Shown: piece by piece, positions 16,566 through 44,547 of the stretch | Layout: every line of letters starts with the position of its first letter | How positions within the stretch are numbered: the stretch's first letter is position 1 | IMG/VR virus record: IMGVR_UViG_3300040801_002079 | Location: 124,001-188,000 of that record | Length of the DNA: 64,000 nucleotides | Strand: one strand, 5' to 3' | The notes under the pieces: generated by a model | What the model saw: only the letters and a program-made list of their open reading frames with translations | Databases searched by the model: none | Told to the model about the DNA's origin: nothing | Made by a program: the position numbers and the translations under genes

Positions 16566-16931
16566 ATGTATACTGCATACGTATTAACAGAAAAATCTAG
16601 AAAGACCCTGTTCTTTCTTTTTCCACCAAAATATCCTGAGGTTATTGGTCACCATATAACCGAAACCTTCGGGGTTTCCAAAGATGCTGAAGCTCCGGAA
16701 ATGCCAACGCTTGTTGAGGTTGTTGGCTACATCGACAATGGTGATGGAGTTGAGGGATTCTTGGTGGAAATAGACGGGTCTAGTGATCGCCCATCTGGTG
16801 GTAAATATCACATTACATGGTCAATTGATCGTGATAAGGGATATAAGCCTGTTAATACTAATGATTATACAAATGATGCAAAACCGGTTAAGCCTGTACG
16901 ATTGCAGGTTGAACCCAAAGTGCTCCGGTAG
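16566..16931 (+). CDS. 2H phosphoesterase (cyclic phosphodiesterase-like)
   Basis: two HxT motifs, GHHITE and KYHITW, about 50 aa apart; its stop TAG lies inside the tRNA gene. Confidence 0.65.
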   Translation: MYTAYVLTEKSRKTLFFLFPPKYPEVIGHHITETFGVSKDAEAPEMPTLVEVVGYIDNGDGVEGFLVEIDGSSDRPSGGKYHITWSIDRDKGYKPVNTNDYTNDAKPVKPVRLQVEPKVLR

Positions 16932-16999
16932 CTCAGTTTGGTTAGAGCAAGAGCTTCTAAAACTCATGGTCGTGGGTTCGAATCCCGCCCGGAGCGCCA
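16922..16999 (+). tRNA. tRNA with CUA anticodon in canonical register (putative amber suppressor), encoded CCA
   Basis: 7-bp acceptor GCTCCGG/CCGGAGC, D arm GCTC/GAGC, loop TT-CTA-AA (16955-16961), T arm GTGGG-TTCGAAT-CCCGC, G73, CCA; anticodon stem has two mismatches. Confidence 0.8.
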
Positions 17000-34659: not shown

Positions 34660-35154
34660 ATGAAGATTAGAGAATTAAAAGAGAGCGCAGACTATCCGGA
34701 AATTATAGTTATGATAGGGCTTCCCGGTGTAGGGAAGAGTACCGTAATAAAGCGGGATTACCCAAACCATACAATCGTATCTTCGGATGATATTATTGAG
34801 AAATATGCTGCCGAAGAAGGAAAGACCTACGATCAGGTTTTTCAGAAATATATTGGGCAAGCTTCAGGCGAAATGAAATCAGTATTTCGCAGAGCAGTCC
34901 AGAATAATGAGAACATTGTCTGGGATCAGACAAATCTTTCCAAGAAGAAAAGGAGAGGTATACTGAGTCAGGTTCCTCGGCATTATAGAAAAGTTGCCGT
35001 GGTATTTGATGTCTCTGATAAAGTTCGTTATGAGCGAATGGCGCAGAGAGAAGGTAAGAGTATTCCTGCTCATGTAATACAGAGTATGGAAAAAGCGTAT
35101 CAGGCCCCAACCAAAGATGAGGGGTTTGATGAAATTAGAGTAATAAAGGAGTAA
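34660..35154 (+). CDS. AAA_33 P-loop kinase (polynucleotide-kinase-like module)
   Basis: MIGLPGVGKST, SSDDII, VWDQTN, lid R..R; MKIRELKE N-terminus. Confidence 0.8.
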   Translation: MKIRELKESADYPEIIVMIGLPGVGKSTVIKRDYPNHTIVSSDDIIEKYAAEEGKTYDQVFQKYIGQASGEMKSVFRRAVQNNENIVWDQTNLSKKKRRGILSQVPRHYRKVAVVFDVSDKVRYERMAQREGKSIPAHVIQSMEKAYQAPTKDEGFDEIRVIKE

Positions 35155-35160
35155 ATAAAA

Positions 35161-35769
35161 ATGGAAAACATGGTAAAGACTTCATTCACCGGACTGAATC
35201 GACTTCCTCAGATTCTAGCATTGAATAAGAGTGGTGAAGCAATGAGATGGATAGACTACGAAAAGTGTGCATATTACTATGCAAAAGATCGCGTACTGTG
35301 GAGTTTAGGACAGTATGAGGTTATTTTGCGCGGTGGTAGGAATGCGCTCACAGGTCAGCCGTCGATACTTACCATGGATTCCATTGTAGCTATTGACAGT
35401 GATCGTAGTCCAACAAAGTCTCGCAATTACACCTCTCCAGCATTGGAGAACAGACTTCTTTTCCGTAGAGATAAGAACATCTGTGCGTATTGTGGACACC
35501 GCTATGGTAGCAACCAGTTAACTCGTGATCACGTTACTCCACGTTCTCGTGGTGGTAAGAACACTTGGGATAACGTTGTTACCGCTTGTAAGGGATGCAA
35601 CCAGTGGAAAGCAGACAGTATGCTTAATGAACTTGATTTAAAGTTGATTTATGTTCCATACACCCCTACATACAATGAGCACTTGATTCTCAAGAATCGC
35701 AAGATACTTGCAGACCAAATGGAATTTCTTATGAAAGGTGTTGGTAAGAACAGCAGACTGTTGTCTTAA
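35161..35769 (+). CDS. HNH endonuclease (McrA-like/HNH_5)
   Basis: CAYCG...TRDHVTPRSRGG...NVVTACKGCN. Confidence 0.9.
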   Translation: MENMVKTSFTGLNRLPQILALNKSGEAMRWIDYEKCAYYYAKDRVLWSLGQYEVILRGGRNALTGQPSILTMDSIVAIDSDRSPTKSRNYTSPALENRLLFRRDKNICAYCGHRYGSNQLTRDHVTPRSRGGKNTWDNVVTACKGCNQWKADSMLNELDLKLIYVPYTPTYNEHLILKNRKILADQMEFLMKGVGKNSRLLS

Positions 35770-35843
35770 CCCTTTACAAGACTACATTTTGTGGTATAAT
35801 ACAAAGGAAGCCTAGAGCTTCCTTTGTTTTTTTGGAGAACAAT

Positions 35844-36416
35844 ATGGATTTACATGAATTTAATAAAAATGCAATAAAAACAGAGTCTTTAGTCGATACT
35901 GTAATTACAGATAGAGCTATTTTAATGGAATCTTTGGTTGCCTTTGAGCAGGTATCAGAATTATTGGATGCATTAAAAAAGAGTGCTTTTTATAATAAAC
36001 CAATAGATGTTGAGAAGCTTATGGGTTCAGCCGATTCAATCAATAAAATTGGATATGTACTCTCAAATGAAGACATATGGGAAATAGGGGCGACAAAAAA
36101 TGACGATATTAACCCTCGTTTATTCCATGCCATAATTGGAATTTTAACTGAAGCGGGTGAACTTGCAACAATATTGATAAATCACTTGCAGGGCGAAGAA
36201 TTGGATACAGTCAACATGCTAGAAGAATTTGGCGACATTGCATGGTATCAAGCAATCGCATATGATGAATTGAATGTTGATCCATACCATCCACTGGTAG
36301 CAGTGATTAACAAACTAAGGGCTAGATACCCAAACAAGTTTACTTCAGATGATGCTATAAATCGTGATGTAGACAGTGAGCGGGCTATACTTGAGGATTC
36401 CTTAAAGGGTGAATAA
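35844..36416 (+). CDS. MazG-like nucleotide pyrophosphohydrolase
   Basis: GILTEAGEL...EEFGDIAWY...KLRARYPNKF. Confidence 0.85.
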   Translation: MDLHEFNKNAIKTESLVDTVITDRAILMESLVAFEQVSELLDALKKSAFYNKPIDVEKLMGSADSINKIGYVLSNEDIWEIGATKNDDINPRLFHAIIGILTEAGELATILINHLQGEELDTVNMLEEFGDIAWYQAIAYDELNVDPYHPLVAVINKLRARYPNKFTSDDAINRDVDSERAILEDSLKGE

Positions 36417-37044
36417 AATGAGACCAGTATGTTTAGTAGATTTAGATGACACATTGGGTGATTTAAAAAATCCAATGATGAAAGCTCTTAATCGATCAAC
36501 CGGAAAGGACATTCATTGGTCGGAGTGGTACACATACAATGTTCCAACATTATATGATATATCCGATGATGCATTTATGGACATATTGATTAATGAGCAT
36601 GTTATTGAGAATTTAGAGATACATCAATCAAGTTATAAATTTCTGAATGATTTGCACTTATTGGGGTATTATACAGTATTGATAACCGCAAGAGGGTGGC
36701 ACCCAAGAGGAAAAGAAATAACCGAAGAATGGGTCAGTGATTATAATTTGGATATTGATGAACTTATCGTGGTTGAACATGATCAAAGTAAAACGGATGT
36801 AATTTCCGGGTTTAATAATATTGTATTTTCGATTGATGATAGAATAAAACATTGTCGAGAATACATGAGAACTGGGCGCATTCAACATGTTTTGGTATAT
36901 GATGCCCCATGGAATACACATATGACGAAACACAACCCATTCGTGGGCGGGGATGATTATCATCAAAGAATTTTTGATCTACATGAAATTATAGAGCACG
37001 TTGAATGGTGCGATAATAAAAGGAGAGTTTCAAATGTTTGCTAA
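36409..37044 (+). CDS. HAD-family 5'-nucleotidase (NT5C-like), second copy
   Basis: LVDLDDTL, LITARG, SIDDR, DAPWN. Confidence 0.82.
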   Translation: MNKMRPVCLVDLDDTLGDLKNPMMKALNRSTGKDIHWSEWYTYNVPTLYDISDDAFMDILINEHVIENLEIHQSSYKFLNDLHLLGYYTVLITARGWHPRGKEITEEWVSDYNLDIDELIVVEHDQSKTDVISGFNNIVFSIDDRIKHCREYMRTGRIQHVLVYDAPWNTHMTKHNPFVGGDDYHQRIFDLHEIIEHVEWCDNKRRVSNVC

Positions 37045-37327
37045 GTTTGCAGATAAAACAAAAGTTGAAAAGTTATTGGAAAAAGATGCTACATTGGTAG
37101 ATATGAGGTCTCCCGTTGCGTTTAGGAACGGATCAATTGAGGGATCAGTTAACCTGCCCCTCAAGAATTTTTTAAATCGTCTTCCCGGACTTGACAAGAA
37201 TAAGGGATTGATCTTATTCAGTGACGCAAAGAACCACCCCGATGTGACTTCAGCAATTAATTATGCTGCGCAGCTTGGGTTTTCCAATATTTTTGTTTCT
37301 GAATATAATACGTTAAAGGACAAATAA
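37034..37327 (+). CDS. Rhodanese-like domain protein (active-site Cys absent)
   Basis: LVDMRSPVAFRNGSIEGSVNLPL; LILFS at the position of the usual IVVYC. Confidence 0.72.
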   Translation: MFAKFADKTKVEKLLEKDATLVDMRSPVAFRNGSIEGSVNLPLKNFLNRLPGLDKNKGLILFSDAKNHPDVTSAINYAAQLGFSNIFVSEYNTLKDK

Positions 37328-37911
37328 TGACTCTAGGTGAACCTGATCAGTGCATTTGTGGTAGAACCGTTTCAGGGTTCAGTACGTGCCCTGTTCACGG
37401 TGATAAATGGTTTGGGACGGGTACCCCAAATGAAAACAATGATAATAAGCCATTTCCAGCGTTATACTATTTAATCCCCGAAGGGGACTATTGTTATAGA
37501 CGGACAGGTAGAGTTGTTATAGATAACCGTGTATGGGATGATGATGAATACAAATATGTTTCATACTATTTTAAGCCTGAAACAAAACTCTGCTCATTCT
37601 GGAAATCCATAGGTGATGGGAATGCTCTTTGCACTTACATGAATGAAATAAGCTATCAGAGTGAATGCAATAATCTGGTATGGGATCAAGTAAAGGAATG
37701 TGGGGTTCGTGTGGCAGACTACAGTTTAGACGAACTTGAGCACATGAGGGACAATGATCCAGATTGGTACAAGGCCACAAAACGCCAAAAGAAATTTCCA
37801 CAATTTATGGAAAGTCTTGTTACTATCCTAATGGACTCAGAAACAAATGAACTGACTTATGATGGAATTACTTACACCCTAAGTCAGCACATTTATGATA
37901 GTGGCAATTAA
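37327..37911 (+). CDS. Cys-rich hypothetical protein
   Basis: CICG...CPVH, YYLIPEGDYCY, LVWDQVKECG. Confidence 0.6.
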   Translation: MTLGEPDQCICGRTVSGFSTCPVHGDKWFGTGTPNENNDNKPFPALYYLIPEGDYCYRRTGRVVIDNRVWDDDEYKYVSYYFKPETKLCSFWKSIGDGNALCTYMNEISYQSECNNLVWDQVKECGVRVADYSLDELEHMRDNDPDWYKATKRQKKFPQFMESLVTILMDSETNELTYDGITYTLSQHIYDSGN

Positions 37912-38660
37912 GCTGTTACTCCCGCTTCTTCCAGTGCACAAATCCAAGATTTAACAAAGGCGCTTCTAACAATGTCATCGGGCCTGAACGTAACTTGGTC
38001 AAACCCTTCCATACGTTCAACAACATTTAGAAACTCTCTCATACCAGACTGATCATTCTTTTTACGATAAAGATCGGTCTGAATCTGATCACCAATTATG
38101 ATTAACTTGGAATTTGCACCAACTCTGGTTATGACTGAGTTAATTTCATAGAAAGTCATATTTTGAACTTCGTCAATTATTATAACAGCGTCATCCCATG
38201 TTAGACCTCTTACAAATGATGTAGGAACAAACTTGACAATTTTTTGTTTCTTCATTTTTTCGTATGCGGTTGGTCTGCCGAATAGGTCAGAGAATATGTC
38301 ATTATATGGGGTCTCGTAGACCTCCATTTTTTCAGCGTCATCACCGGGGAGGAATCCTATGTCCCTAGAGGCTACTGCGCTTCGGACAATTATCATGTTG
38401 TCCTGTTTTGATTTCTTTGATAGGACATCTGTTAATCCCAGATAAATTGCTGCGTAGGTTTTTCCTGTTCCTGCTGAGCCGTTTGCTAAAATGTTATTAC
38501 CGTAAAAGTAAGATTCAAACATTTGGTGTTGAGGGGTGTTTATTGGTTTTATTGATTTTAAATCATTTATTGTTAGGCGTTTTGATTCTTTGAAATCTTG
38601 AAGTGCCTGTACGTCATTTTCTATAACTTTCATAGTGCATCGCTTTGACTTTCTACTCAT
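37908..38660 (-). CDS. phoH: PhoH family ATPase
   Basis: GSAGTGKT, GFLPG, RGLTW, IIDEVQN, IGDQIQTD, DIVRS. Confidence 0.95.
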   Translation of the reverse strand: MSRKSKRCTMKVIENDVQALQDFKESKRLTINDLKSIKPINTPQHQMFESYFYGNNILANGSAGTGKTYAAIYLGLTDVLSKKSKQDNMIIVRSAVASRDIGFLPGDDAEKMEVYETPYNDIFSDLFGRPTAYEKMKKQKIVKFVPTSFVRGLTWDDAVIIIDEVQNMTFYEINSVITRVGANSKLIIIGDQIQTDLYRKKNDQSGMREFLNVVERMEGFDQVTFRPDDIVRSAFVKSWICALEEAGVTA

Positions 38661-38898: not shown

Positions 38899-39102
38899 AT
38901 GACACAAGTATATGTTTATAATGGAAAAGAAGTTTTTTTAACGGGAAGAACTGCTAAAAAGAGTAGCAGAAGAGGCGACAAAGTATTGCATGAGATTCTT
39001 CCTAAGAGGTATATGAACAAAGAAATTGACTCATTTATTGAATCCGATTGGGTGTTTTTAAAGGACCTCTATGCTATAGTCGAAAATTCAGAAGATAAAT
39101 AA
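38899..39102 (+). CDS. hypothetical protein
   Basis: VYVYNGKEVFLTGRTAKK pattern; GGAG SD. Confidence 0.6.
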   Translation: MTQVYVYNGKEVFLTGRTAKKSSRRGDKVLHEILPKRYMNKEIDSFIESDWVFLKDLYAIVENSEDK

Positions 39103-39122
39103 GCTTAAACGAGGTTAATATA

Positions 39123-39455
39123 ATGAAAACAATAAACGAAAGAGCCGATATTATATCAAACACTTTTCAGAATAAAGCACTTAGCTTTCTTAAAGGAATG
39201 GAAGAACGAATGGGGAATGATTTGATTTATTCTCTAGCTCTTGAAGCTGGAAATGTTTTTCTCTGCGTTGCTGCACACCCATCAATGACACCAAAACGCT
39301 GGGACACAGAGCGGGAACGTATTCTGTTCTTAATTGATGAAGAGGAATATGGAATGGATCAAGATGAACTTATTGAGGTTCTCTCTGAGCGCCTAGAAGA
39401 TCATATGTATTATGTCACTGCGGGACCCGAAGAAAATGAAACTGAGACATCTTAA
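39123..39455 (+). CDS. hypothetical protein
   Basis: late promoter 39095-39101, GAGG SD. Confidence 0.65.
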   Translation: MKTINERADIISNTFQNKALSFLKGMEERMGNDLIYSLALEAGNVFLCVAAHPSMTPKRWDTERERILFLIDEEEYGMDQDELIEVLSERLEDHMYYVTAGPEENETETS

Positions 39456-40029
39456 GCCCGTACCACAAACCGACTATGATCCGCGTGATCCAATTGGAAC
39501 AGTGTATACATTTAGACATCCCGATGGTATGCGTGGCACCGTAACTGTATTAGAAAAAATTGAAGATGAAGCCTCAGGGGTATTTGTCGGAGTGAAGTTT
39601 TCCGAGGAAACCAATGATGCCATAATGAATTTTATTGAATCTCAGGATATCCCAAATCCTGTAACAAAAGATAAACTACATTGTACTGTTATGTACACAT
39701 ATAGTGATGCCCCTGATTTAATTGAAGAAAGTAGACCCCCTCTTATCCCCGCATGGAATGCTACACCGGATAAATTTGAAATATTTGAAACACAGGATGA
39801 TAATAATTGCTTGGTTTTAAGAATAAAATGTGATGAACTAACCGAAAGGCATGAGAAAATCATAGCGGATTACGGAGTTGTTTATACGCACGAGGAATAC
39901 AAGCCACATATAACATTATCATATGATTGTGGAGATTTCGATATTTCAACGTTGGACAAAGATGCGTTACCTGATGAAATCCTTATAACAGAGGAGTATG
40001 CATCATCGATTGATCCAGACTGGGTATAG
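39436..40029 (+). CDS. acb1: Anti-CBASS nuclease Acb1 / T4 gp57B-like 2H phosphoesterase with N-terminal extension
   Basis: VGVKFSEET...IPNPV...KLHCTVMY...YKPHITLSY...EEY...DPDW follows T4 gp57B along its length. Confidence 0.85.
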   Translation: MKLRHLKPVPQTDYDPRDPIGTVYTFRHPDGMRGTVTVLEKIEDEASGVFVGVKFSEETNDAIMNFIESQDIPNPVTKDKLHCTVMYTYSDAPDLIEESRPPLIPAWNATPDKFEIFETQDDNNCLVLRIKCDELTERHEKIIADYGVVYTHEEYKPHITLSYDCGDFDISTLDKDALPDEILITEEYASSIDPDWV

Positions 40030-40031
40030 TG

Positions 40032-40038
40032 ATAAATA
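40032..40038 (+). promoter_or_regulatory. T4-type late promoter driving the tmRNA
   Basis: ATAAATA just after the acb1 stop and before the acceptor piece. Confidence 0.7.
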
Positions 40039-40043
40039 AGTAT

Positions 40044-40328
40044 AACATTGTACGATCCATTTAAGGATTTATTGTGGACGGCGGTTCGATTCCGCCCATT
40101 TCCACCAAAAGCATACCTAATGGGTATATTTTATGATGGGAATGCACTGGTTTCGACATGGTAAGTTGGTAAATGAGGACAATGCGGCAACCGTGAAAGT
40201 CGTTAGGGTAAAACCAAAGAAGCAAAAAACTAAATGCAAACGATAGCATATATGATCAGGCCCTTGCCGCTTGATCGTGGGTTTAGCCAACCTTGAACCA
40301 GAACGGGTTAGGGGGGAGTAATCCCCCC
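40044..40328 (+). ncRNA. ssrA: Circularly permuted (two-piece) tmRNA; tag ANDSIYDQALAA
   Basis: acceptor piece with T arm and CATTTCC-A-CCA ends at 40107; coding piece starts GGGAATG at 40138 (G3:U70, A73); tag frame 40236-40274; terminator 40311-40328; late promoter 40032-40038. Confidence 0.9.
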
Positions 40329-40351
40329 GAATTTTATCAAAAGGGACTTCT

Positions 40352-41107
40352 ATGAATCACGCAAAAAATGATGAGACTTACAACGATAACAATAATAACA
40401 ATGAACAGCCTCTTTTTCCATTTTTACCTAACAGGGAACAAATAAGGTCCTTTAAAAGAACCATCCCAGTAGCGGTCTATGACTTCTACATTACTGATGA
40501 AATAAAAGAACCAGATGTGTACATGGAGTTAATTCAAACTCTTAAAAGTGCTGATCCTCAGGATACAATTTTCATCTATTTAAATACTCCGGGCGGGAGC
40601 CTCTATACTACCATTCAGATAATGTCGGCAATCACTAGCTCACAGGCAAAGGTCATAACATGCCTTGAAGGGCAGGCATGTTCTGCTGGAACATTCATTT
40701 TCTTAGCGGGAGACACTAAAATAGTTAATCCCCACTGTACGTTCATGGTTCATAATTATAGCCAAGGAGCAAGTGGTAAGGGTAACGAAATTGTATCCCA
40801 TGTTAATTACATGGATCGATATTTTAAAAGACTAGCTGAAGATGTATACACTGAGTTTTTAACCAAAACTGAGTTGGAATCCGTTATTAAGGGTGATGAC
40901 ATGTGGATGGATTCACACGAACTGGTGAAAAGATTAGATGCCAACAACCATGACTACATCTACACGGGCCAAGATTTGGATGAAATATTAGGCAGAGACC
41001 CTGATGAGATTTCAGATGAAATGGAAGATGCTTCTAAGCCCAAACAAAGGGCAAAAAAGAAAGTAACTAAGAAAAAAGCTTCGAGGAAAAAAACCGCGTC
41101 TGATTAA
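40352..41107 (+). CDS. clpP: ClpP-like serine protease with Lys-rich C-terminal tail
   Basis: YLNTPGGS, ACSAG (Ser), FMVHN (His), DMWMDSHE. Confidence 0.9.
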   Translation: MNHAKNDETYNDNNNNNEQPLFPFLPNREQIRSFKRTIPVAVYDFYITDEIKEPDVYMELIQTLKSADPQDTIFIYLNTPGGSLYTTIQIMSAITSSQAKVITCLEGQACSAGTFIFLAGDTKIVNPHCTFMVHNYSQGASGKGNEIVSHVNYMDRYFKRLAEDVYTEFLTKTELESVIKGDDMWMDSHELVKRLDANNHDYIYTGQDLDEILGRDPDEISDEMEDASKPKQRAKKKVTKKKASRKKTASD

Positions 41108-41145
41108 TATTGACCCACCCATCTTCAATGTGATATAATTTCAAA

Positions 41146-42156
41146 ATGAATTATGAGTGCATTGAAGATGTAGTCAGAGAGCATGTTGCATTTAAAAATG
41201 TGTCAGCATCTGGCTGGAACCAAGCATATTGTGAATATTGTGGCGATGGCGGGAGAACCAAGGGTCCCCGTGGTAATTGGCTATTTGATGGTGATATGCT
41301 ATTCTTCAATTGCTATAATTGTGGAACCAAAGCAAATTTTGATCCTCACAGGGAGATACCATTTAGTAAGCACATGCATGGTGTCTTCAAGGCTCACGGA
41401 ATCCCATTAAAGTTCTGTTATGCGTTAATCCCCAAAGATGCTAATGCCGAAACTAGGGAAGTTAAGCCTCAAAAACTTAAATTTGATTCATTTGAATTAC
41501 CGGATCATTTTTATAAACTATCAAGTGCAGCAATGGATGACAAAAAAGCAATCATTGCTCGTGAACATTTAATAAACAAACGTAAAATTGATCCGGACGA
41601 TTTCCCGTTTTATCTATCAAGCGGAGTTACACAATCATCTAGCCCTAAAGATATAAGTTTGGCTAAGACATTTCAGCAAAGACTTATAATTCCATCATAT
41701 GTCAATGATACATTAATTGGGTATGAGGGAATGGCCCTATATCCAAATAAAAACAAATATATAACAATTGGTTCTAATTTGGTACACGGCTATTCTAATA
41801 TTTTCAGGGAAGAGGGGCATGTGCCACTGTTTGTAACTGAAGGATTTTTTGATTCATATCATGTAAATGGAGTCGCATTGTGTACAAACTCCTTAAGTAA
41901 TAAGCATATAGAGCTTCTGGAAAAGACATCTAGGCCCAAGGTTGTTATACCGGATAGGAAGAATACACATAACGCTTTAGCTGAAGAGGCACTTAATCTT
42001 GGATGGGGCGTGTCGCTACCCGAAATAAAGCCATATAAGGATATTTCAGAGGCAATTGAGCACTATGGTGTATTTTTCGTATTAAATTCGGTTATGAAAT
42101 CCATAAAATACGGGGATAGTGGAAAAATTTATTTAAAAATATATAATGTTGCATAA
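41146..42156 (+). CDS. DNA primase (T4 gp61-like)
   Basis: zinc ribbon CEYC...CYNC; TOPRIM FVTEGFFDS, VVIPDR, KDISE; TTGACC-17-TATAAT promoter upstream. Confidence 0.85.
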   Translation: MNYECIEDVVREHVAFKNVSASGWNQAYCEYCGDGGRTKGPRGNWLFDGDMLFFNCYNCGTKANFDPHREIPFSKHMHGVFKAHGIPLKFCYALIPKDANAETREVKPQKLKFDSFELPDHFYKLSSAAMDDKKAIIAREHLINKRKIDPDDFPFYLSSGVTQSSSPKDISLAKTFQQRLIIPSYVNDTLIGYEGMALYPNKNKYITIGSNLVHGYSNIFREEGHVPLFVTEGFFDSYHVNGVALCTNSLSNKHIELLEKTSRPKVVIPDRKNTHNALAEEALNLGWGVSLPEIKPYKDISEAIEHYGVFFVLNSVMKSIKYGDSGKIYLKIYNVA

Positions 42157-42181
42157 ATAAGTTTGTAAATCTCATTTTTTT

Positions 42182-42373
42182 ATGGAGTATAATATGGATC
42201 ACATGGAAGTTGTTGACACCCAAGAAAAAGCAATCGAAGCTGCTGCTAGAGAGCTTTTTAAACTGACCATTTTAGCCGAAGAAGAGCGTATCTCTAAAAT
42301 TGAGATTAATAACAGCGCTGATTTTTCATTTAGACGCGAATATTTTCAAAAGGCTATACAAAATTTGTTATAA
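42182..42373 (+). CDS. hypothetical protein
   Basis: late promoter 42153-42159. Confidence 0.55.
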   Translation: MEYNMDHMEVVDTQEKAIEAAARELFKLTILAEEERISKIEINNSADFSFRREYFQKAIQNLL

Positions 42374-42957: not shown

Positions 42958-44547
42958 ATGAAATTAGAATTTAGACAGGGCTTAGTCCAAATACAATCTA
43001 CACCACCATTTATAACTACATCGGGCGGCAGTGTAAGTCTAAATTCGTCTGTAACCGATAATATTGTAACATTTGCACACGGTGAAGATAATTACCTTTT
43101 TATAGAATCTAATGATCTTCCCGGTGCATGGACGGGTCCATTCGGGGCTGGAACAACGTGGCTCTATTGGAATCTGGATATAGAGACTGGAGTAAGAACC
43201 TTCGGAAGTACCACTCTTGACCCAACTGGATATGGAGATGATATGCCATCCAGTCCAGTAATGGGTGAAATGTTCTTTTCAACATTAGAAAATAAAATGA
43301 AGGAATGGAATGGTTATAAATGGGTAACCGTTCTGCGTGTACTTGCAGGGGAAATAACTGGGGGAACATTAACGCCATATAGCGAAGGATCACAAATCTC
43401 AGATGATTTTCAAGCATATGCAGGATATTTGCTTTTTGATGAAAATGGAAATCCATTTAAAGAATCTGATCCATTTAATCGTGGTCATTTTGTACATACT
43501 GAGACAAGGCTTAAAGCACAAAATACACCACTCAATCAATACGAGCAAAGAAATACCGAATATTCATATACATCGGATACATCAATACCTGAGGGTTATT
43601 GTGTAGCACTGATAGAAGACAAAACTCTAACCGTTGCATCATATAGAAAGCCTGAAAGACCATGTATTGGAATATCATTAATGGACTTATATGCTGGTGA
43701 TATGGGCAGGTATGTGACGGAGGGGGTGCTGACCTTTGAGGGCTGGAATTTTGATTCCGTACCTAATACCCCTGTTTGGGTTGGACCAAATGGAGAAGTT
43801 ACCACCACTGTACCAACCGAAACTTCAATTCAGAGGTTAGGGTTTGTGGTTTCAAAAAACAGTATACTATTGGATATAAGAGAGCCGGTTTTACTAGACC
43901 CATCTTATAAGGACTGCTTTGTTCCATCACCAACTCCAACTCCAACTCCAACTGTTACACCAACCATTACTGCAACCGTTACACCCACGGCGACAGTTAC
44001 ACCAACTGTTACAGCTACGGCATCTGTTACACCAACTGTTACCCCAACTACTACAGTTGATCCAACAGTAACACCAACTGTTACAGCCGCTATTACACCA
44101 ACACCAACAGTAACACCAACAGTTACCCCAACTATGACGGTAACGCCTGAAGTTAGCCCATCACCAACAACAACTCCTGCTCCATCTGCTGAGGCCACAC
44201 CAACCCCAACTGTTACTTCAGGATTAACTCCAACTGTTACTCCAACTTCTACAGTTACACCAACAATTACTTCAACTGCGGAAGTAACACCAACCCCAAC
44301 AGCTACGACTGGTCTAACACCAACAGTTACACCAGAGGTTACACCAACGAATACGGTAACACCTCCCGTTACACCAACAGTTACTCCATCTTTATCTGTT
44401 GGGGCATCCCCCACACCTACTCCAACGGTTACACCAACGAACACGGCAACAACTACACCTACCCCAACAGTTACGCCGACAATGACAGTAACCCCAACTC
44501 CTTCCCCATTAAGCGGATTGAAGACACTCTTTATTGACTGGACATAA
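42958..44547 (+). CDS. Virion fibre/decoration protein with about 190-aa TPTV mucin-like stalk
   Basis: late promoter 42926-42932; C-terminal third is nearly pure T/P/V/A/S. Confidence 0.8.
   Translation: MKLEFRQGLVQIQSTPPFITTSGGSVSLNSSVTDNIVTFAHGEDNYLFIESNDLPGAWTGPFGAGTTWLYWNLDIETGVRTFGSTTLDPTGYGDDMPSSPVMGEMFFSTLENKMKEWNGYKWVTVLRVLAGEITGGTLTPYSEGSQISDDFQAYAGYLLFDENGNPFKESDPFNRGHFVHTETRLKAQNTPLNQYEQRNTEYSYTSDTSIPEGYCVALIEDKTLTVASYRKPERPCIGISLMDLYAGDMGRYVTEGVLTFEGWNFDSVPNTPVWVGPNGEVTTTVPTETSIQRLGFVVSKNSILLDIREPVLLDPSYKDCFVPSPTPTPTPTVTPTITATVTPTATVTPTVTATASVTPTVTPTTTVDPTVTPTVTAAITPTPTVTPTVTPTMTVTPEVSPSPTTTPAPSAEATPTPTVTSGLTPTVTPTSTVTPTITSTAEVTPTPTATTGLTPTVTPEVTPTNTVTPPVTPTVTPSLSVGASPTPTPTVTPTNTATTTPTPTVTPTMTVTPTPSPLSGLKTLFIDWT

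What the first reader, a model, noticed from the sequence alone, without database searches (positions are those of the whole stretch)
40044..41107. tmRNA directly coupled to a phage ClpP: candidate self-contained tag-and-destroy module
Seen: the tmRNA terminator ends at 40328 and a ClpP-like gene starts at 40352. The tag ends in LAA. Established: C-terminal LAA is the ClpX recognition signal of SsrA tags. The ClpP has intact Ser/His motifs and an unusual acidic region followed by a Lys-rich tail (KPKQRAKKKVTKKKASRKK). Inference: the phage rescues ribosomes stalled by host mRNA/tRNA-cleaving defences or by phage-driven mRNA decay, and supplies proteolytic capacity. The basic tail might bind RNA or ribosomes and partly replace an AAA+ adaptor. 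An acb1 gene sits immediately upstream, so this may be a counter-defence island.
Basis: inference. Interest (0 to 1): 0.78.

Follow-up and report, generated by a model that had tools for sequence, protein, structure and literature searches.

The report
Conserved phage tmRNA–ClpP transcription unit
A 317-kb uncultivated jumbo phage carries a two-piece ribosome-rescue RNA (tmRNA) directly in front of a divergent ClpP-type protease gene; the pairing is kept in most of its relatives and looks like one transcription unit, but whether the protease destroys the tagged proteins is untested.

Summary
A tmRNA lies at 40046-40335 and encodes the tag ANDSIYDQALAA. Its 3' hairpin ends at 40328. A 251-aa ClpP-fold gene starts at 40352, and an Acb1 gene ends at 40029. 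The adjacency is not chance. Among 33 distinct relatives with the same ClpP-primase core, 18 have a permuted tmRNA immediately 5' of ClpP and 4 more have one within 3 kb. All 8 closest relatives have it. Two other, well-separated phage ClpP lineages also have a tmRNA within 0-3 kb. The tmRNA follows a T4-late-like ATAAATA promoter. In the window's subclade no promoter fits between the leaky hairpin and the ClpP start, so co-transcription is inferred. Two metatranscriptomes from the source sample contain only the tmRNA coding piece. "Self-contained" is not supported: the genome has no SmpB and no Clp-type unfoldase. The ClpX-docking residues and N-terminal loops have diverged. The LAA ending is not conserved in relatives. 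The basic tail also occurs in relatives without a tmRNA. A separate T4-type prohead protease rules out a head-maturation role. Best reading: a co-expressed rescue-plus-proteolysis unit that depends on host factors. Its functional coupling is plausible but unproven.

The parts
39412..40029 (+). Acb1-family 2H phosphoesterase gene (205 aa). It is the upstream neighbour and ends 2 nt before the tmRNA promoter motif.
   Evidence: PF23474 at 116 bits and phrog_755. Two H-x-T motifs are visible in the translation. It lies upstream of ClpP in many, but not all, relatives.
40031..40038 (+). GATAAATA, a T4-late-promoter-like motif about 8 nt before the tmRNA 5' end.
   Evidence: ATAAATA is 54% intergenic in this genome against 8.7% expected, and usually lies 12-40 nt before ORF starts. 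The same motif precedes the tmRNA in 13 of the relatives examined: L016, L019, L020, L025, L060 and L211-L217.
40046..40107 (+). tmRNA acceptor piece: T-arm, 3' acceptor strand CATTTCC, discriminator A and an encoded CCA.
   Evidence: Rfam RF04321. The T stem pairs 5/5 and the acceptor 7/7, with G3:U70.
40108..40137 (+). Intervening spacer of the permuted precursor, excised on maturation. Its length ranges from 12 to about 140 nt in relatives.
   Evidence: Fold, alignment and spacer lengths.
40138..40335 (+). tmRNA coding piece. It holds the 5' acceptor strand GGGAATG, the tag ORF at 40236-40274 (ANDSIYDQALAA plus stop) and the 3' G-rich hairpin at 40311-40328 with a weak U tract.
   Evidence: ARAGORN, Rfam and the terminator scan. 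RNA-library contigs cover 40147-40307 only.
40341..40346 (+). AAGGGA, a ribosome-binding site for clpP. Only 23 nt separate the hairpin from the ATG and no promoter motif lies between them.
   Evidence: Sequence and comparison with 8 close relatives.
40352..41107 (+). ClpP-family (S14-like) serine peptidase gene, 251 aa. Ser111 is encoded at 40682-40684, His134 at 40751-40753 and Asp183 at 40898-40900. The acidic linker and Lys/Arg-rich tail are encoded from about 40985 to 41104.
   Evidence: Pfam and PHROG matches, alignment A2, the AF2 model, PDB fold matches to ClpP with TM 0.70-0.77 and the tail comparison.
41110..41139 (+). Sigma-70-like promoter (TTGACC, 18 nt, TATAAT with TG) in front of the primase gene. 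It marks a change of promoter class directly after clpP.
   Evidence: Promoter scan, 11 of 12 matches. TATAAT-type boxes stand before the primase gene in relatives.
41146..42156 (+). DNA primase gene (336 aa), the downstream neighbour of ClpP in every relative of the clade.
   Evidence: phrog_47 and synteny.
37908..38660 (-). PhoH-like ATPase gene, a recurrent neighbour of ClpP in this and other phage lineages.
   Evidence: PF02562 at 159 bits and synteny.

Best explanation
A circularly permuted (two-piece) tmRNA gene and a divergent ClpP-fold serine peptidase gene form one phage transcription unit, driven by a T4-late-like ATAAATA promoter at 40031-40038. The primary transcript is cut by host tRNA-processing enzymes into the acceptor piece and the coding piece. 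RNA polymerase that reads through the leaky 3' hairpin (40311-40328) continues into clpP, which starts 23 nt later.

The tmRNA is charged with alanine by host AlaRS (G3:U70) and works with host SmpB and EF-Tu. It frees stalled ribosomes during infection and adds ANDSIYDQALAA to the unfinished chains. The co-expressed peptidase raises the capacity to clear such unfolded, tagged fragments. It would act either alone on unstructured chains or with a host unfoldase.

Shown here: the gene anatomy, covariation in the tmRNA, the ClpP fold and catalytic triad, conserved adjacency, the shared promoter class, the absence of a separate ClpP promoter in this subclade, and accumulation of the tmRNA coding piece in RNA libraries.

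Inferred: read-through transcription, timing of expression, trans-translation activity, and above all that the tagged chains are substrates of the phage peptidase.
For: tmRNA identity and function-like constraint:
- Rfam scores are 123 and 98.6 bits.
- Across 17 clade members the T stem pairs 5/5 and the acceptor 6-7 of 7 (14 of 16 at 7/7), with more than 8 different sequences. G3:U70 and A73 are present in 15 of the 16 where the arms could be located.
- The tag frame is conserved.

Linkage:
- The tmRNA is immediately 5' of ClpP in 18 of 33 distinct relatives and within 3 kb in 22.
- It is present in all 8 closest relatives (52-73% ClpP identity, from different metagenomes). This includes L211, which lacks Acb1, and L218, which has a LAGLIDADG insertion.
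- The adjacent state occurs in every ClpP subclade, so it is ancestral.
- tmRNA nearest neighbours mirror ClpP sister pairs.
- In L025 the tmRNA has moved but still abuts ClpP.
- Two further ClpP lineages, separated by branches with support of at least 99/98, also have a tmRNA within 0-3 kb. One of them groups with bacterial ClpP.

Transcription:
- ATAAATA is about 6-fold enriched in intergenic DNA and precedes the tmRNA in 14 genomes.
- In more distant relatives the same motif also precedes ClpP after a stronger terminator.
- In the window's subclade only 22-36 nt separate the hairpin from the ATG, with no functional promoter motif between them (L213's ATAAATA abuts the ATG).
- The primase gene has a sigma-70-type promoter instead.

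Expression: two metatranscriptomes of the source sample hold a contig of about 156 nt covering 40147-40307 only. The DNA run covers the flanks at about 5x.

ClpP:
- The model has pLDDT 83, and the core matches solved ClpP structures with TM 0.70-0.77.
- The triad is conserved.
- A separate S77 prohead protease exists.
Against: - The two genes are separable. Eleven of 33 relatives keep ClpP with no tmRNA nearby. Two complete genomes (the L010 genome and RAS14) have no permuted tmRNA at all. In XacN1, Xoo-sp13 and L027 the tmRNA lies 50-86 kb away.
- Three complete tmRNA-bearing phage genomes have no ClpP.
- ClpP-primase adjacency is even more conserved (33 of 33).
- The phage encodes no unfoldase and no SmpB.
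- The Pfam match starts at profile position 34, and no N-terminal helix is predicted. Pocket positions equivalent to E. coli M92 and L114 are Glu106 and Asn126.
- The ClpX docking prediction gave no answer.
- Tag C-termini vary: KAA, QAA and DVA.
- No ClpP mRNA contig was seen in the RNA libraries, although assembled contigs cannot show absence.
- Stable RNA genes are often co-transcribed with unrelated mRNAs in T4-like phages (established knowledge).
Confidence: 0.45

Rival explanations
1. The genes are co-located but functionally independent. The tmRNA only rescues ribosomes. The ClpP-like peptidase has other substrates, such as host regulators, phage early proteins or replication factors. 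The adjacency persists through inherited gene order and a convenient shared late-type promoter, as with T4 tRNA genes embedded in mRNA operons.
For: ClpP keeps its intact triad and its tail in relatives that lack a nearby or any tmRNA. ClpP-primase adjacency is universal, and ClpP-PhoH adjacency is common in other lineages without a tmRNA. ClpP often lies next to ordinary tRNA arrays (L028, L048, L070). Iyer et al. 2021 (PMC7824862) read jumbo-phage ClpP as aimed at host proteins.
Against: The tmRNA stays attached to ClpP while everything upstream varies. Acb1 is lost in some relatives, 4 kb is inserted in L019 and a homing endonuclease is inserted in L218. The tmRNA relocated to the other side of ClpP in L025. 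Proximity recurs in three well-separated ClpP lineages. The promoter class is shared with the tmRNA, not with the primase.
Confidence: 0.4
2. The ClpP-like protein is a virion or prohead maturation protease, or a packaged protein whose basic tail binds DNA, and has nothing to do with tagged proteins.
For: There are weaker PHROG matches to ClpP-type head maturation proteases (phrog_1684 and phrog_94). The gene follows a late-type promoter motif. The Lys-rich tail could bind DNA.
Against: The genome has its own T4 gp21-type S77 prohead protease, 80 kb away. The best PHROG families are non-structural 'ATP-dependent protease' (200 and 159 bits, against 101 or less). The neighbours are Acb1, PhoH and primase, not structural genes. 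Homologues occur in T4-like phages, which in T4 itself use a gp21-type protease (T4 biology from general knowledge). The XacN1 virion proteome paper does not mention it.
Confidence: 0.05
3. The phage tmRNA acts as a competitor or re-programmer of host trans-translation. It would divert stalled ribosomes to a tag that host proteases handle differently, and the phage peptidase with its basic tail would be recruited to ribosomes or tmRNA and replace the host adaptor or unfoldase step.
For: Tags in the clade are longer and more acidic than a typical ANDENYALAA-type tag, and their last three residues vary while the ANDS[IT][YF] start is conserved. The peptidase tail is highly basic (12 K/R in the last 25 residues), like the C-terminal tails of SmpB and ArfB that enter the mRNA channel (established knowledge). 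The canonical ClpX pocket is altered.
Against: The tail is equally present without a tmRNA. There is no structural or binding evidence, and the tail has low model confidence. ClpP-fold barrels are not known to degrade folded proteins without an unfoldase.
Confidence: 0.08
4. The tmRNA is a non-functional remnant or an attachment-site fragment picked up from a host.
For: tmRNA genes are common integration sites, and fragments of them occur in prophages (PMC9004378).
Against: The gene is full length and both pieces are present. The stems co-vary, G3:U70 is conserved and the tag frame is conserved across relatives whose ClpP is only about 45% identical. It has its own promoter motif. The coding piece is found in RNA libraries. 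The phages are lytic-type jumbo phages with terminal repeats.
Confidence: 0.02

Closest known systems
Bacterial trans-translation coupled to ClpXP (ssrA/SmpB tagging, with degradation by ClpXP, ClpAP and the SspB adaptor; E. coli paradigm)
   Same: The tmRNA has an alanine-accepting tRNA-like domain and a short tag ending in Ala-Ala. The partner is a ClpP-fold Ser-His-Asp peptidase.
   Different: Both genes are phage-borne and adjacent. In bacteria ssrA sits beside smpB and clpP beside clpX (general knowledge). Here the tmRNA is permuted, and there is no SmpB, ClpX, ClpA or SspB in the phage. The peptidase lacks the canonical N-terminal loops and several docking-pocket residues, and it carries an acidic-basic C-terminal extension.
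Two-piece (circularly permuted) tmRNAs of Alpha- and Betaproteobacteria and cyanobacteria (Keiler 2000; Sharkady and Williams 2004; Rfam RF01849-51 and RF04321), and phage-borne ones such as OM43 phage Melnitz (PMC9004378)
   Same: The gene order is acceptor piece, spacer, coding piece. The full-length match to the beta-type model includes the terminal hairpin. Phage two-piece tmRNAs are already known: 53 of the 133 unique phage tmRNAs in Buchholz et al.
   Different: In Melnitz the tmRNA lies upstream of a transcription co-activator and carries a glutamine riboswitch. No link to a protease gene has been described. Here the downstream gene is ClpP, and the pairing is conserved across a jumbo-phage clade.
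Phage 'ATP-dependent protease' ClpP-like family (PHROG 1827 and 5410; XacN1 ORF177, Xoo-sp13 gp177; homologues in phages related to T5, KVP40 and PVP-SE1)
   Same: It is the same protein family (phrog_1827 at 200 bits; 39-43% identity to the Xanthomonas and Stenotrophomonas jumbo-phage proteins). The ClpP-primase synteny is the same.
   Different: In the named, cultivated relatives a DNA ligase gene fills the slot 5' of ClpP. Their tmRNA is about 50 kb away (XacN1, Xoo-sp13) or absent (RAS14). No function has been tested for any member that I could find.
T4 tRNA gene cluster transcribed together with protein-coding genes (general knowledge)
   Same: A stable RNA is cut out of a longer phage transcript that also carries mRNA. 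The promoter is of the TATAAATA type.
   Different: Here the unit is a single tmRNA followed by one specific protease gene, and it recurs across lineages.

Membership tests
tmRNA, permuted (two-piece) form | tRNA-like domain with a T-arm and a 7-bp acceptor stem formed between two separate segments | tested here: met
   RF04321 scores 123 bits against a cut-off of 47. The T stem pairs 5/5 and the acceptor 7/7 in the window. Compensatory changes occur across 16 relatives.
tmRNA, permuted (two-piece) form | G3:U70 wobble pair and A73, the alanine identity elements | tested here: met
   GGGAATG pairs with CATTTCC-A-CCA. G3:U70 is present in 15 of the 16 clade members scored.
tmRNA, permuted (two-piece) form | Tag reading frame with an Ala resume codon, a stop codon and a C-terminal Ala-Ala | tested here: met
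   The frame at 40236-40274 reads GCA...TGA and encodes ANDSIYDQALAA. Homologous tags are found in 25 or more relatives.
tmRNA, permuted (two-piece) form | Gene order of acceptor piece (ending in CCA), then spacer, then coding piece | tested here: met
   ARAGORN flags it as permuted. The CCA lies at 40105-40107 and the 5' GGG at 40138.
tmRNA, permuted (two-piece) form | Expressed and processed into stable pieces | tested here: inconclusive
   Two RNA libraries from the source sample hold a contig at 40147-40307 (the coding piece) and nothing on the flanks. The word depth is low (about 3) and these are assembled contigs, so the exact ends are not mapped.
tmRNA, permuted (two-piece) form | Binds SmpB, is charged by AlaRS and supports trans-translation | not testable with these tools
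   There is no SmpB in the phage genome, so host SmpB would be needed.
ClpP (MEROPS S14) proteolytic subunit | ClpP alpha/beta fold with a handle region | tested here: met
   The AF2 model has pLDDT 83, and above 90 over most of the residue 40-205 core. Foldseek against PDB returns ClpP chains as all of the top 50 listed hits, with TM(target) 0.63-0.77 and rmsd of about 3 A over about 170 residues.
ClpP (MEROPS S14) proteolytic subunit | Ser-His-Asp catalytic triad at the canonical positions | tested here: met
   S111 and H134 are invariant and D183 is nearly invariant in 41 sequences. They align with the Ser, His and Asp of Coxiella ClpP 3q7h.
ClpP (MEROPS S14) proteolytic subunit | N-terminal axial loops and helix A that gate the pore and contact the ATPase | tested here: not met
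   The Pfam match covers profile positions 34-168 only. No helix is predicted before the first strand at residue 42, and residues 1-30 have low confidence.
ClpP (MEROPS S14) proteolytic subunit | Hydrophobic pocket for the IGF/LGF loops of ClpX/ClpA (E. coli Y60, Y62, F82, I90, M92, F112, L114; residue list from memory) | tested here: inconclusive
   From the alignment with 3q7h: F74 and Y76 are retained. The positions of F82, M92 and L114 are polar or charged (Gln or Ser, an invariant Glu106 and a near-invariant Asn126). The docking prediction with E. coli ClpX returned 'no answer'.
ClpP (MEROPS S14) proteolytic subunit | Heptameric rings stacked into a tetradecamer | not tested
ClpP (MEROPS S14) proteolytic subunit | Cognate AAA+ unfoldase encoded alongside | tested here: not met
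   There is no PF07724 (AAA_2) hit in the complete genome. Its only PF00004 hit over the cut-off is a clamp-loader-like protein.
Phage head-maturation protease (S77/S78, or the ClpP/S49 type fused to scaffold or capsid) | It is the phage's only prohead protease and lies within the structural gene module | tested here: not met
   A separate Peptidase_S77 gene (80 bits) lies at genome 244713-245195. The neighbours of ClpP are Acb1, PhoH and primase.
Acb1 anti-CBASS 2H phosphoesterase (upstream neighbour) | Pfam Acb1 domain with two H-x-T/S motifs | tested here: met
   PF23474 scores 116 bits against a cut-off of 27. HCT and HIT motifs are in the translation. Enzyme activity was not tested.
Operon-like tmRNA-clpP transcription unit (proposed here) | Same strand, a promoter upstream of the tmRNA, no promoter between the genes, and conserved order | tested here: met
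   ATAAATA lies at 40032-40038. The hairpin-to-ATG gap is 23 nt without the motif. The same layout holds in 8 of 8 closest relatives.
Operon-like tmRNA-clpP transcription unit (proposed here) | A transcript that physically spans the tmRNA 3' hairpin into clpP | tested here: inconclusive
   No RNA contig crosses 40307-40352. Contigs show presence only, and raw reads were not available.

The most novel reading that the evidence does not exclude
The tmRNA-clpP pair is a dedicated phage quality-control operon. The phage supplies both the tagging RNA and a matching ClpP-fold peptidase, and their dosage is set by read-through of the tmRNA hairpin. Truncated proteins made late in infection would then be tagged and removed by phage-controlled machinery. 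In this reading the peptidase's acidic-basic tail recruits it to ribosomes or to the acidic tag, which makes it partly independent of host ClpX. The same solution would have arisen or been retained in at least three separate phage ClpP lineages.
Probability: 0.25. Interest if true: 0.8.

Novelty: new variant of a known kind. Interest (0 to 1): 0.6.

Why it matters
Phage tmRNAs and phage ClpP-like genes are each known, but neither has an established role. I found no paper that connects them; five full-text searches covered these topics. A conserved, probably co-transcribed tmRNA-clpP unit gives a concrete, testable hypothesis for both: phages manage ribosome stalling and the resulting truncated proteins during late infection. 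The locus is compact, about 1.1 kb, and can be cloned and assayed. The divergent ClpP also raises a question about proteolysis in general: can a ClpP barrel be recruited without the usual IGF-loop docking? If the linkage turns out to be only transcriptional, it is still a clear example of a stable RNA and an mRNA sharing one phage late promoter, with a leaky hairpin setting their ratio.

Tried and rejected
- DNA similarity search of 39000-42200 against the 50,697 GenBank phage records found no match. The phage has no close sequenced relative there, or its own record is masked.
- A single-protein scan of IMG/VR found nothing. The alignment-based scan worked.
- The ClpX docking prediction (two phage ClpP chains plus E. 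coli ClpX) returned 'no answer', so it counts neither for nor against.
- Head-maturation protease: rejected, because a separate S77 protease exists and the gene context is wrong.
- Phage-encoded unfoldase: rejected. There is no AAA_2 hit and the AAA hit is clamp-loader-like.
- Phage SmpB: absent.
- tmRNA as an attachment-site remnant: rejected on covariation and completeness.
- Basic tail as a tmRNA-specific feature: rejected, because it is also present in relatives without a tmRNA.
- TAG recoding linked to the CUA-anticodon tRNA: no sign. TAG ends 15% of long ORFs and shows no excess of back-up stops.
- tmRNA phylogeny deeper than sister pairs: the sequences are too short and saturated, so only nearest-neighbour agreement is reported.
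- ClpP mRNA in metatranscriptomes: not seen. Only assembled contigs at low depth were available, so absence cannot be concluded.
- Host identification was not attempted beyond noting the microbial-mat origin and the beta-type tmRNA model match.
Full report
**What is in the sequence**

The window is bases 124001-188000 of a complete 316,801-bp viral contig with direct terminal repeats. The contig has 39% G+C, 43 tRNA genes and one tmRNA gene. DNA runs that hold it come from a microbial-mat metagenome.

ARAGORN reports a permuted tmRNA at 40015-40365 with the tag ANDSIYDQALAA. Rfam's permuted-tmRNA model matches 40046-40274 at 123 bits. The beta-type two-piece model matches end to end at 98.6 bits, including the terminal hairpin.

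Read directly, the gene has three parts:
- An acceptor piece of about 40046-40107, with the T-arm, the 3' acceptor strand CATTTCC, discriminator A and an encoded CCA.
- A 30-nt spacer.
- A coding piece from 40138, with the 5' strand GGGAATG (which gives G3:U70), the tag frame at 40236-40274 and a G-rich hairpin at 40311-40328 followed by GAATTTTATC.

The hairpin is scored as terminator-like. The next gene starts at 40352 behind an AAGGGA ribosome-binding site. It encodes a 251-aa protein that matches Pfam Clp_protease (77 bits, profile positions 34-168 only) and PHROG 1827 'ATP-dependent protease' (200 bits). The gene upstream (39412-40029) is Acb1 (116 bits). PhoH lies at 37908-38660 on the other strand, and a DNA primase gene follows at 41146.

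**The tmRNA looks functional**

Seventeen members of the phage clade were examined, and the T-arm and acceptor could be located in 16 of them. In those, the T stem pairs 5 of 5. The acceptor stem pairs 7 of 7 in 14 of the 16 and 6 of 7 in the other two. The stem sequences differ in more than eight ways, which is compensatory change. G3:U70 and A73 are present in 15 of the 16. The tag frame is conserved. Its start is ANDS[IT][YF] in the window's subclade. Its last three residues vary: LAA, IAA, QAA, KAA, MAA and DVA.

Two metatranscriptome runs from the same sample as the DNA each contain one contig of about 156 nt. That contig covers 40147-40307, which is the coding piece. The runs hold nothing on the flanks, which the DNA run covers at about 5x. 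This fits a processed, stable RNA that accumulates in nature. The depth is low and the exact ends are not mapped.

**The ClpP-like protein**

An AlphaFold2 model built on 41 homologues has a mean pLDDT of 83. Confidence is above 90 over most of residues 40-205. It is low for residues 1-30 and for the tail at 211-251. Foldseek returns solved ClpP chains as all of the top 50 listed matches, with TM 0.63-0.77 (mostly 0.70-0.77), rmsd of about 3 A and 20-24% identity. Ser111 and His134 are invariant and Asp183 is nearly invariant, and they align with the catalytic residues of Coxiella ClpP.

The protein departs from canonical ClpP in four ways:
- The N-terminal helix and axial loops are missing.
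- The positions that correspond to E. coli pocket residues F82, M92 and L114 (residue list from memory, mapping) are polar, or are an invariant Glu106 and a near-invariant Asn126.
- An acidic linker and a Lys/Arg-rich tail follow the core.
- The genome has no ClpX/ClpA-type ATPase. Its only clear AAA hit is a clamp-loader-like protein.

SmpB is also absent. A docking prediction with E. coli ClpX returned 'no answer'. The tail is not tied to the tmRNA. It is just as basic in relatives without a nearby tmRNA (L017, L021) and in complete genomes with no permuted tmRNA (the L010 genome, RAS14). A separate T4 gp21-type prohead protease (Peptidase_S77, 80 bits) lies at genome 244713-245195. Head maturation is therefore not this protein's job. 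In representative bacterial genomes only canonical ClpP appears, at about 30% identity, apart from three contigs that look like phage. The subfamily is therefore essentially viral.

**Is the adjacency conserved?**

The named relatives would have suggested no. In XacN1, Xoo-sp13 and RAS14 the order is ligase-ClpP-primase. An unannotated permuted tmRNA lies about 50 kb away in the first two, and RAS14 has none. Uncultivated relatives give a different picture.

| State of the tmRNA among 33 distinct loci with the ClpP-primase core | Loci |
|---|---|
| Immediately 5' of ClpP, same strand | 18 |
| 0.3-2.6 kb upstream, with small inserted ORFs (L009, L221, L060) | 3 |
| Between ClpP and primase (L025) | 1 |
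| No tmRNA within 3.5-6 kb | 11 |

All eight closest relatives (52-73% ClpP identity, from JGI, ENA and Logan assemblies) have the pairing. That includes L211, which lacks Acb1, and L218, where a LAGLIDADG gene separates Acb1 from the tmRNA. On a ClpP tree the adjacent state is found in every subclade, interspersed with losses, so it is ancestral. tmRNA nearest neighbours agree with ClpP sister pairs.

Two other ClpP lineages show the same tendency. In a lineage that groups with bacterial ClpP (support 96/99), a permuted tmRNA lies 1-2.4 kb upstream of a 185-aa ClpP on the same strand, again with PhoH nearby (L091, L123, L129, L130, L154, L164). In the clade holding L224 and L078 (support 100/99), the tmRNA is adjacent through one tRNA gene or lies 3 kb away.

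The pairing is not obligatory. Three complete tmRNA-bearing phage genomes have no ClpP, and most ClpP-bearing phages sampled have no tmRNA nearby.

**Transcription signals**

The heptamer ATAAATA occurs 156 times in the genome and 85 of those are intergenic (54% against 8.7% expected). It usually lies 12-40 nt upstream of an ORF. It resembles the T4 late promoter TATAAATA. The timing this implies rests on that analogy only.

The motif sits at 40032-40038, about 8 nt before the tmRNA 5' end. It holds the same position in L016, L019, L020, L025, L060 and L211-L217. In more distant relatives the tmRNA ends with a strong terminator, and a second ATAAATA then precedes ClpP (L011, L012, L013, L019, L020, L023).

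In the window and its eight closest relatives, the hairpin is followed by a weak or absent U tract. Only 22-36 nt, holding just a ribosome-binding site, separate it from the ClpP start. No functional promoter motif lies in that gap; in L213 an ATAAATA abuts the ATG, too close to serve as a promoter. I infer that clpP is expressed there by read-through from the tmRNA promoter.

The primase gene is universally adjacent to ClpP but has a sigma-70-type promoter (41110-41139, 11 of 12 matches; TATAAT boxes in relatives). The transcriptional partner of clpP is therefore the tmRNA, not the primase.

**Interpretation**

The evidence supports a conserved, co-regulated tmRNA-clpP unit. It does not show that the peptidase degrades tmRNA-tagged chains.

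In favour of functional coupling:
- The link persists while the upstream DNA changes.
- In L025 the tmRNA moved to the other side of ClpP but kept the link.
- The link recurs in three ClpP lineages.

Against functional coupling:
- The two genes are easily separated in evolution.
- The peptidase keeps its triad and tail without a tmRNA.
- There is no unfoldase.
- The docking surface has diverged.
- The tag ends vary.
- ClpP is also often found beside ordinary tRNA arrays and PhoH, so the pattern may reflect a general 'translation and auxiliary gene' neighbourhood.

I put the tag-and-degrade reading, with host SmpB, AlaRS and EF-Tu and probably a host unfoldase, at about 0.45. I put 'co-transcribed but functionally independent' at about 0.4.

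**Comparison with what is known**

Permuted tmRNAs in phages are known. Buchholz et al. (PMC9004378) counted 53 two-piece forms among 133 unique phage tmRNAs, mostly from aquatic phages, and their phage Melnitz has the tmRNA upstream of a transcription co-activator. The tmRNA database paper lists 79 phage sequences. Iyer et al. (PMC7824862) note ClpP in some jumbo phages as probably aimed at host proteins and do not mention tmRNA. The XacN1 paper mentions neither the tmRNA nor ClpP. Five full-text searches on these topics found no description of a tmRNA-ClpP linkage. I therefore rate this as a new variant of known kinds: a new, conserved arrangement with a clear hypothesis, not a new class of system.

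Noticed in passing
window 16922-16999 (+): A tRNA with a CUA anticodon (ARAGORN calls it 'tRNA-Pyl'), that is, an amber-suppressor-type tRNA. TAG still ends 45 of 298 long ORFs and shows no excess of in-frame back-up stops, so there is no sign of TAG recoding.
   Followed up: partly
L004:1501-1800 and L006 (XacN1 37231-37530 and 356026-356325); L005 (Xoo-sp13 39030-39373): The cultivated Xanthomonas jumbo phages XacN1 (two copies, about 319 kb apart and so probably one in each terminal repeat) and Xoo-sp13 carry permuted tmRNA genes. The XacN1 paper does not mention a tmRNA.
   Followed up: partly
genome-wide; for example window 40032-40038, 42926, 45961 and 34631: ATAAATA, which is like the T4 late promoter, is about 6-fold enriched in intergenic DNA. 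It lies 12-40 nt upstream of about 70 ORFs. It is probably the phage's own promoter core.
   Followed up: partly
L033, L036, L042, L049, L055, L067, L068, L074, L076, L083, L084, L088 (and PhoH near ClpP in the window at 37908-38660): In many unrelated phage contigs a ClpP-like gene directly abuts or overlaps a long (about 460 aa) PhoH gene. Within the sample examined, ClpP-PhoH is a more widespread gene pair than ClpP-tmRNA.
   Followed up: no
L129:4429-10461 (also L164, L130, L123, L154, L091): A second phage lineage (contigs up to 171 kb) has this order on one strand: UvdE, PhoH, GH19, a PD-(D/E)XK nuclease, a 2OG-Fe(II) oxygenase, a permuted tmRNA, four small ORFs, a cell-wall hydrolase and a 185-aa ClpP.
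   Followed up: partly
window 42958-44547 (+): A 529-aa ORF whose C-terminal half is an almost pure Thr/Pro/Val repeat (TPTPTVTPT...). The reverse strand carries a mirror GV-rich ORF, which is an artefact. Only weak PHROG hits of unknown function were found.
   Followed up: no
window 34660-37327 (+): Upstream context: an AAA_33 P-loop kinase (polynucleotide-kinase-like, 82 bits), an HNH endonuclease, and a rhodanese-domain ORF that overlaps the end of the preceding gene. Together with PhoH and the 2H phosphoesterase Acb1, this could be read as an RNA-repair or translation-maintenance neighbourhood. The corresponding ORFs recur in relatives L211-L217.
   Followed up: no
L009:5650-5880 and L060 just upstream of ClpP: A small hydrophobic ORF of about 65-75 aa, with its own ATAAATA motif, is inserted between the tmRNA and ClpP in two sister phages.
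   Followed up: no
L213:6291-7457; L218:3229-3642; L212 and L214 locus starts: Mobile elements pepper the conserved region in relatives: an IS605 OrfB/TnpB (Cas12f-like) gene, a LAGLIDADG homing endonuclease between Acb1 and the tmRNA, and HNH genes. None of them separates the tmRNA from ClpP.
   Followed up: no
L212:3689-3920, L019, L025: Some relatives do not encode the 3'-terminal CCA of the acceptor piece (ACA, CTA or AAA instead). They would need the host CCA-adding enzyme, unlike the window's tmRNA.
   Followed up: no
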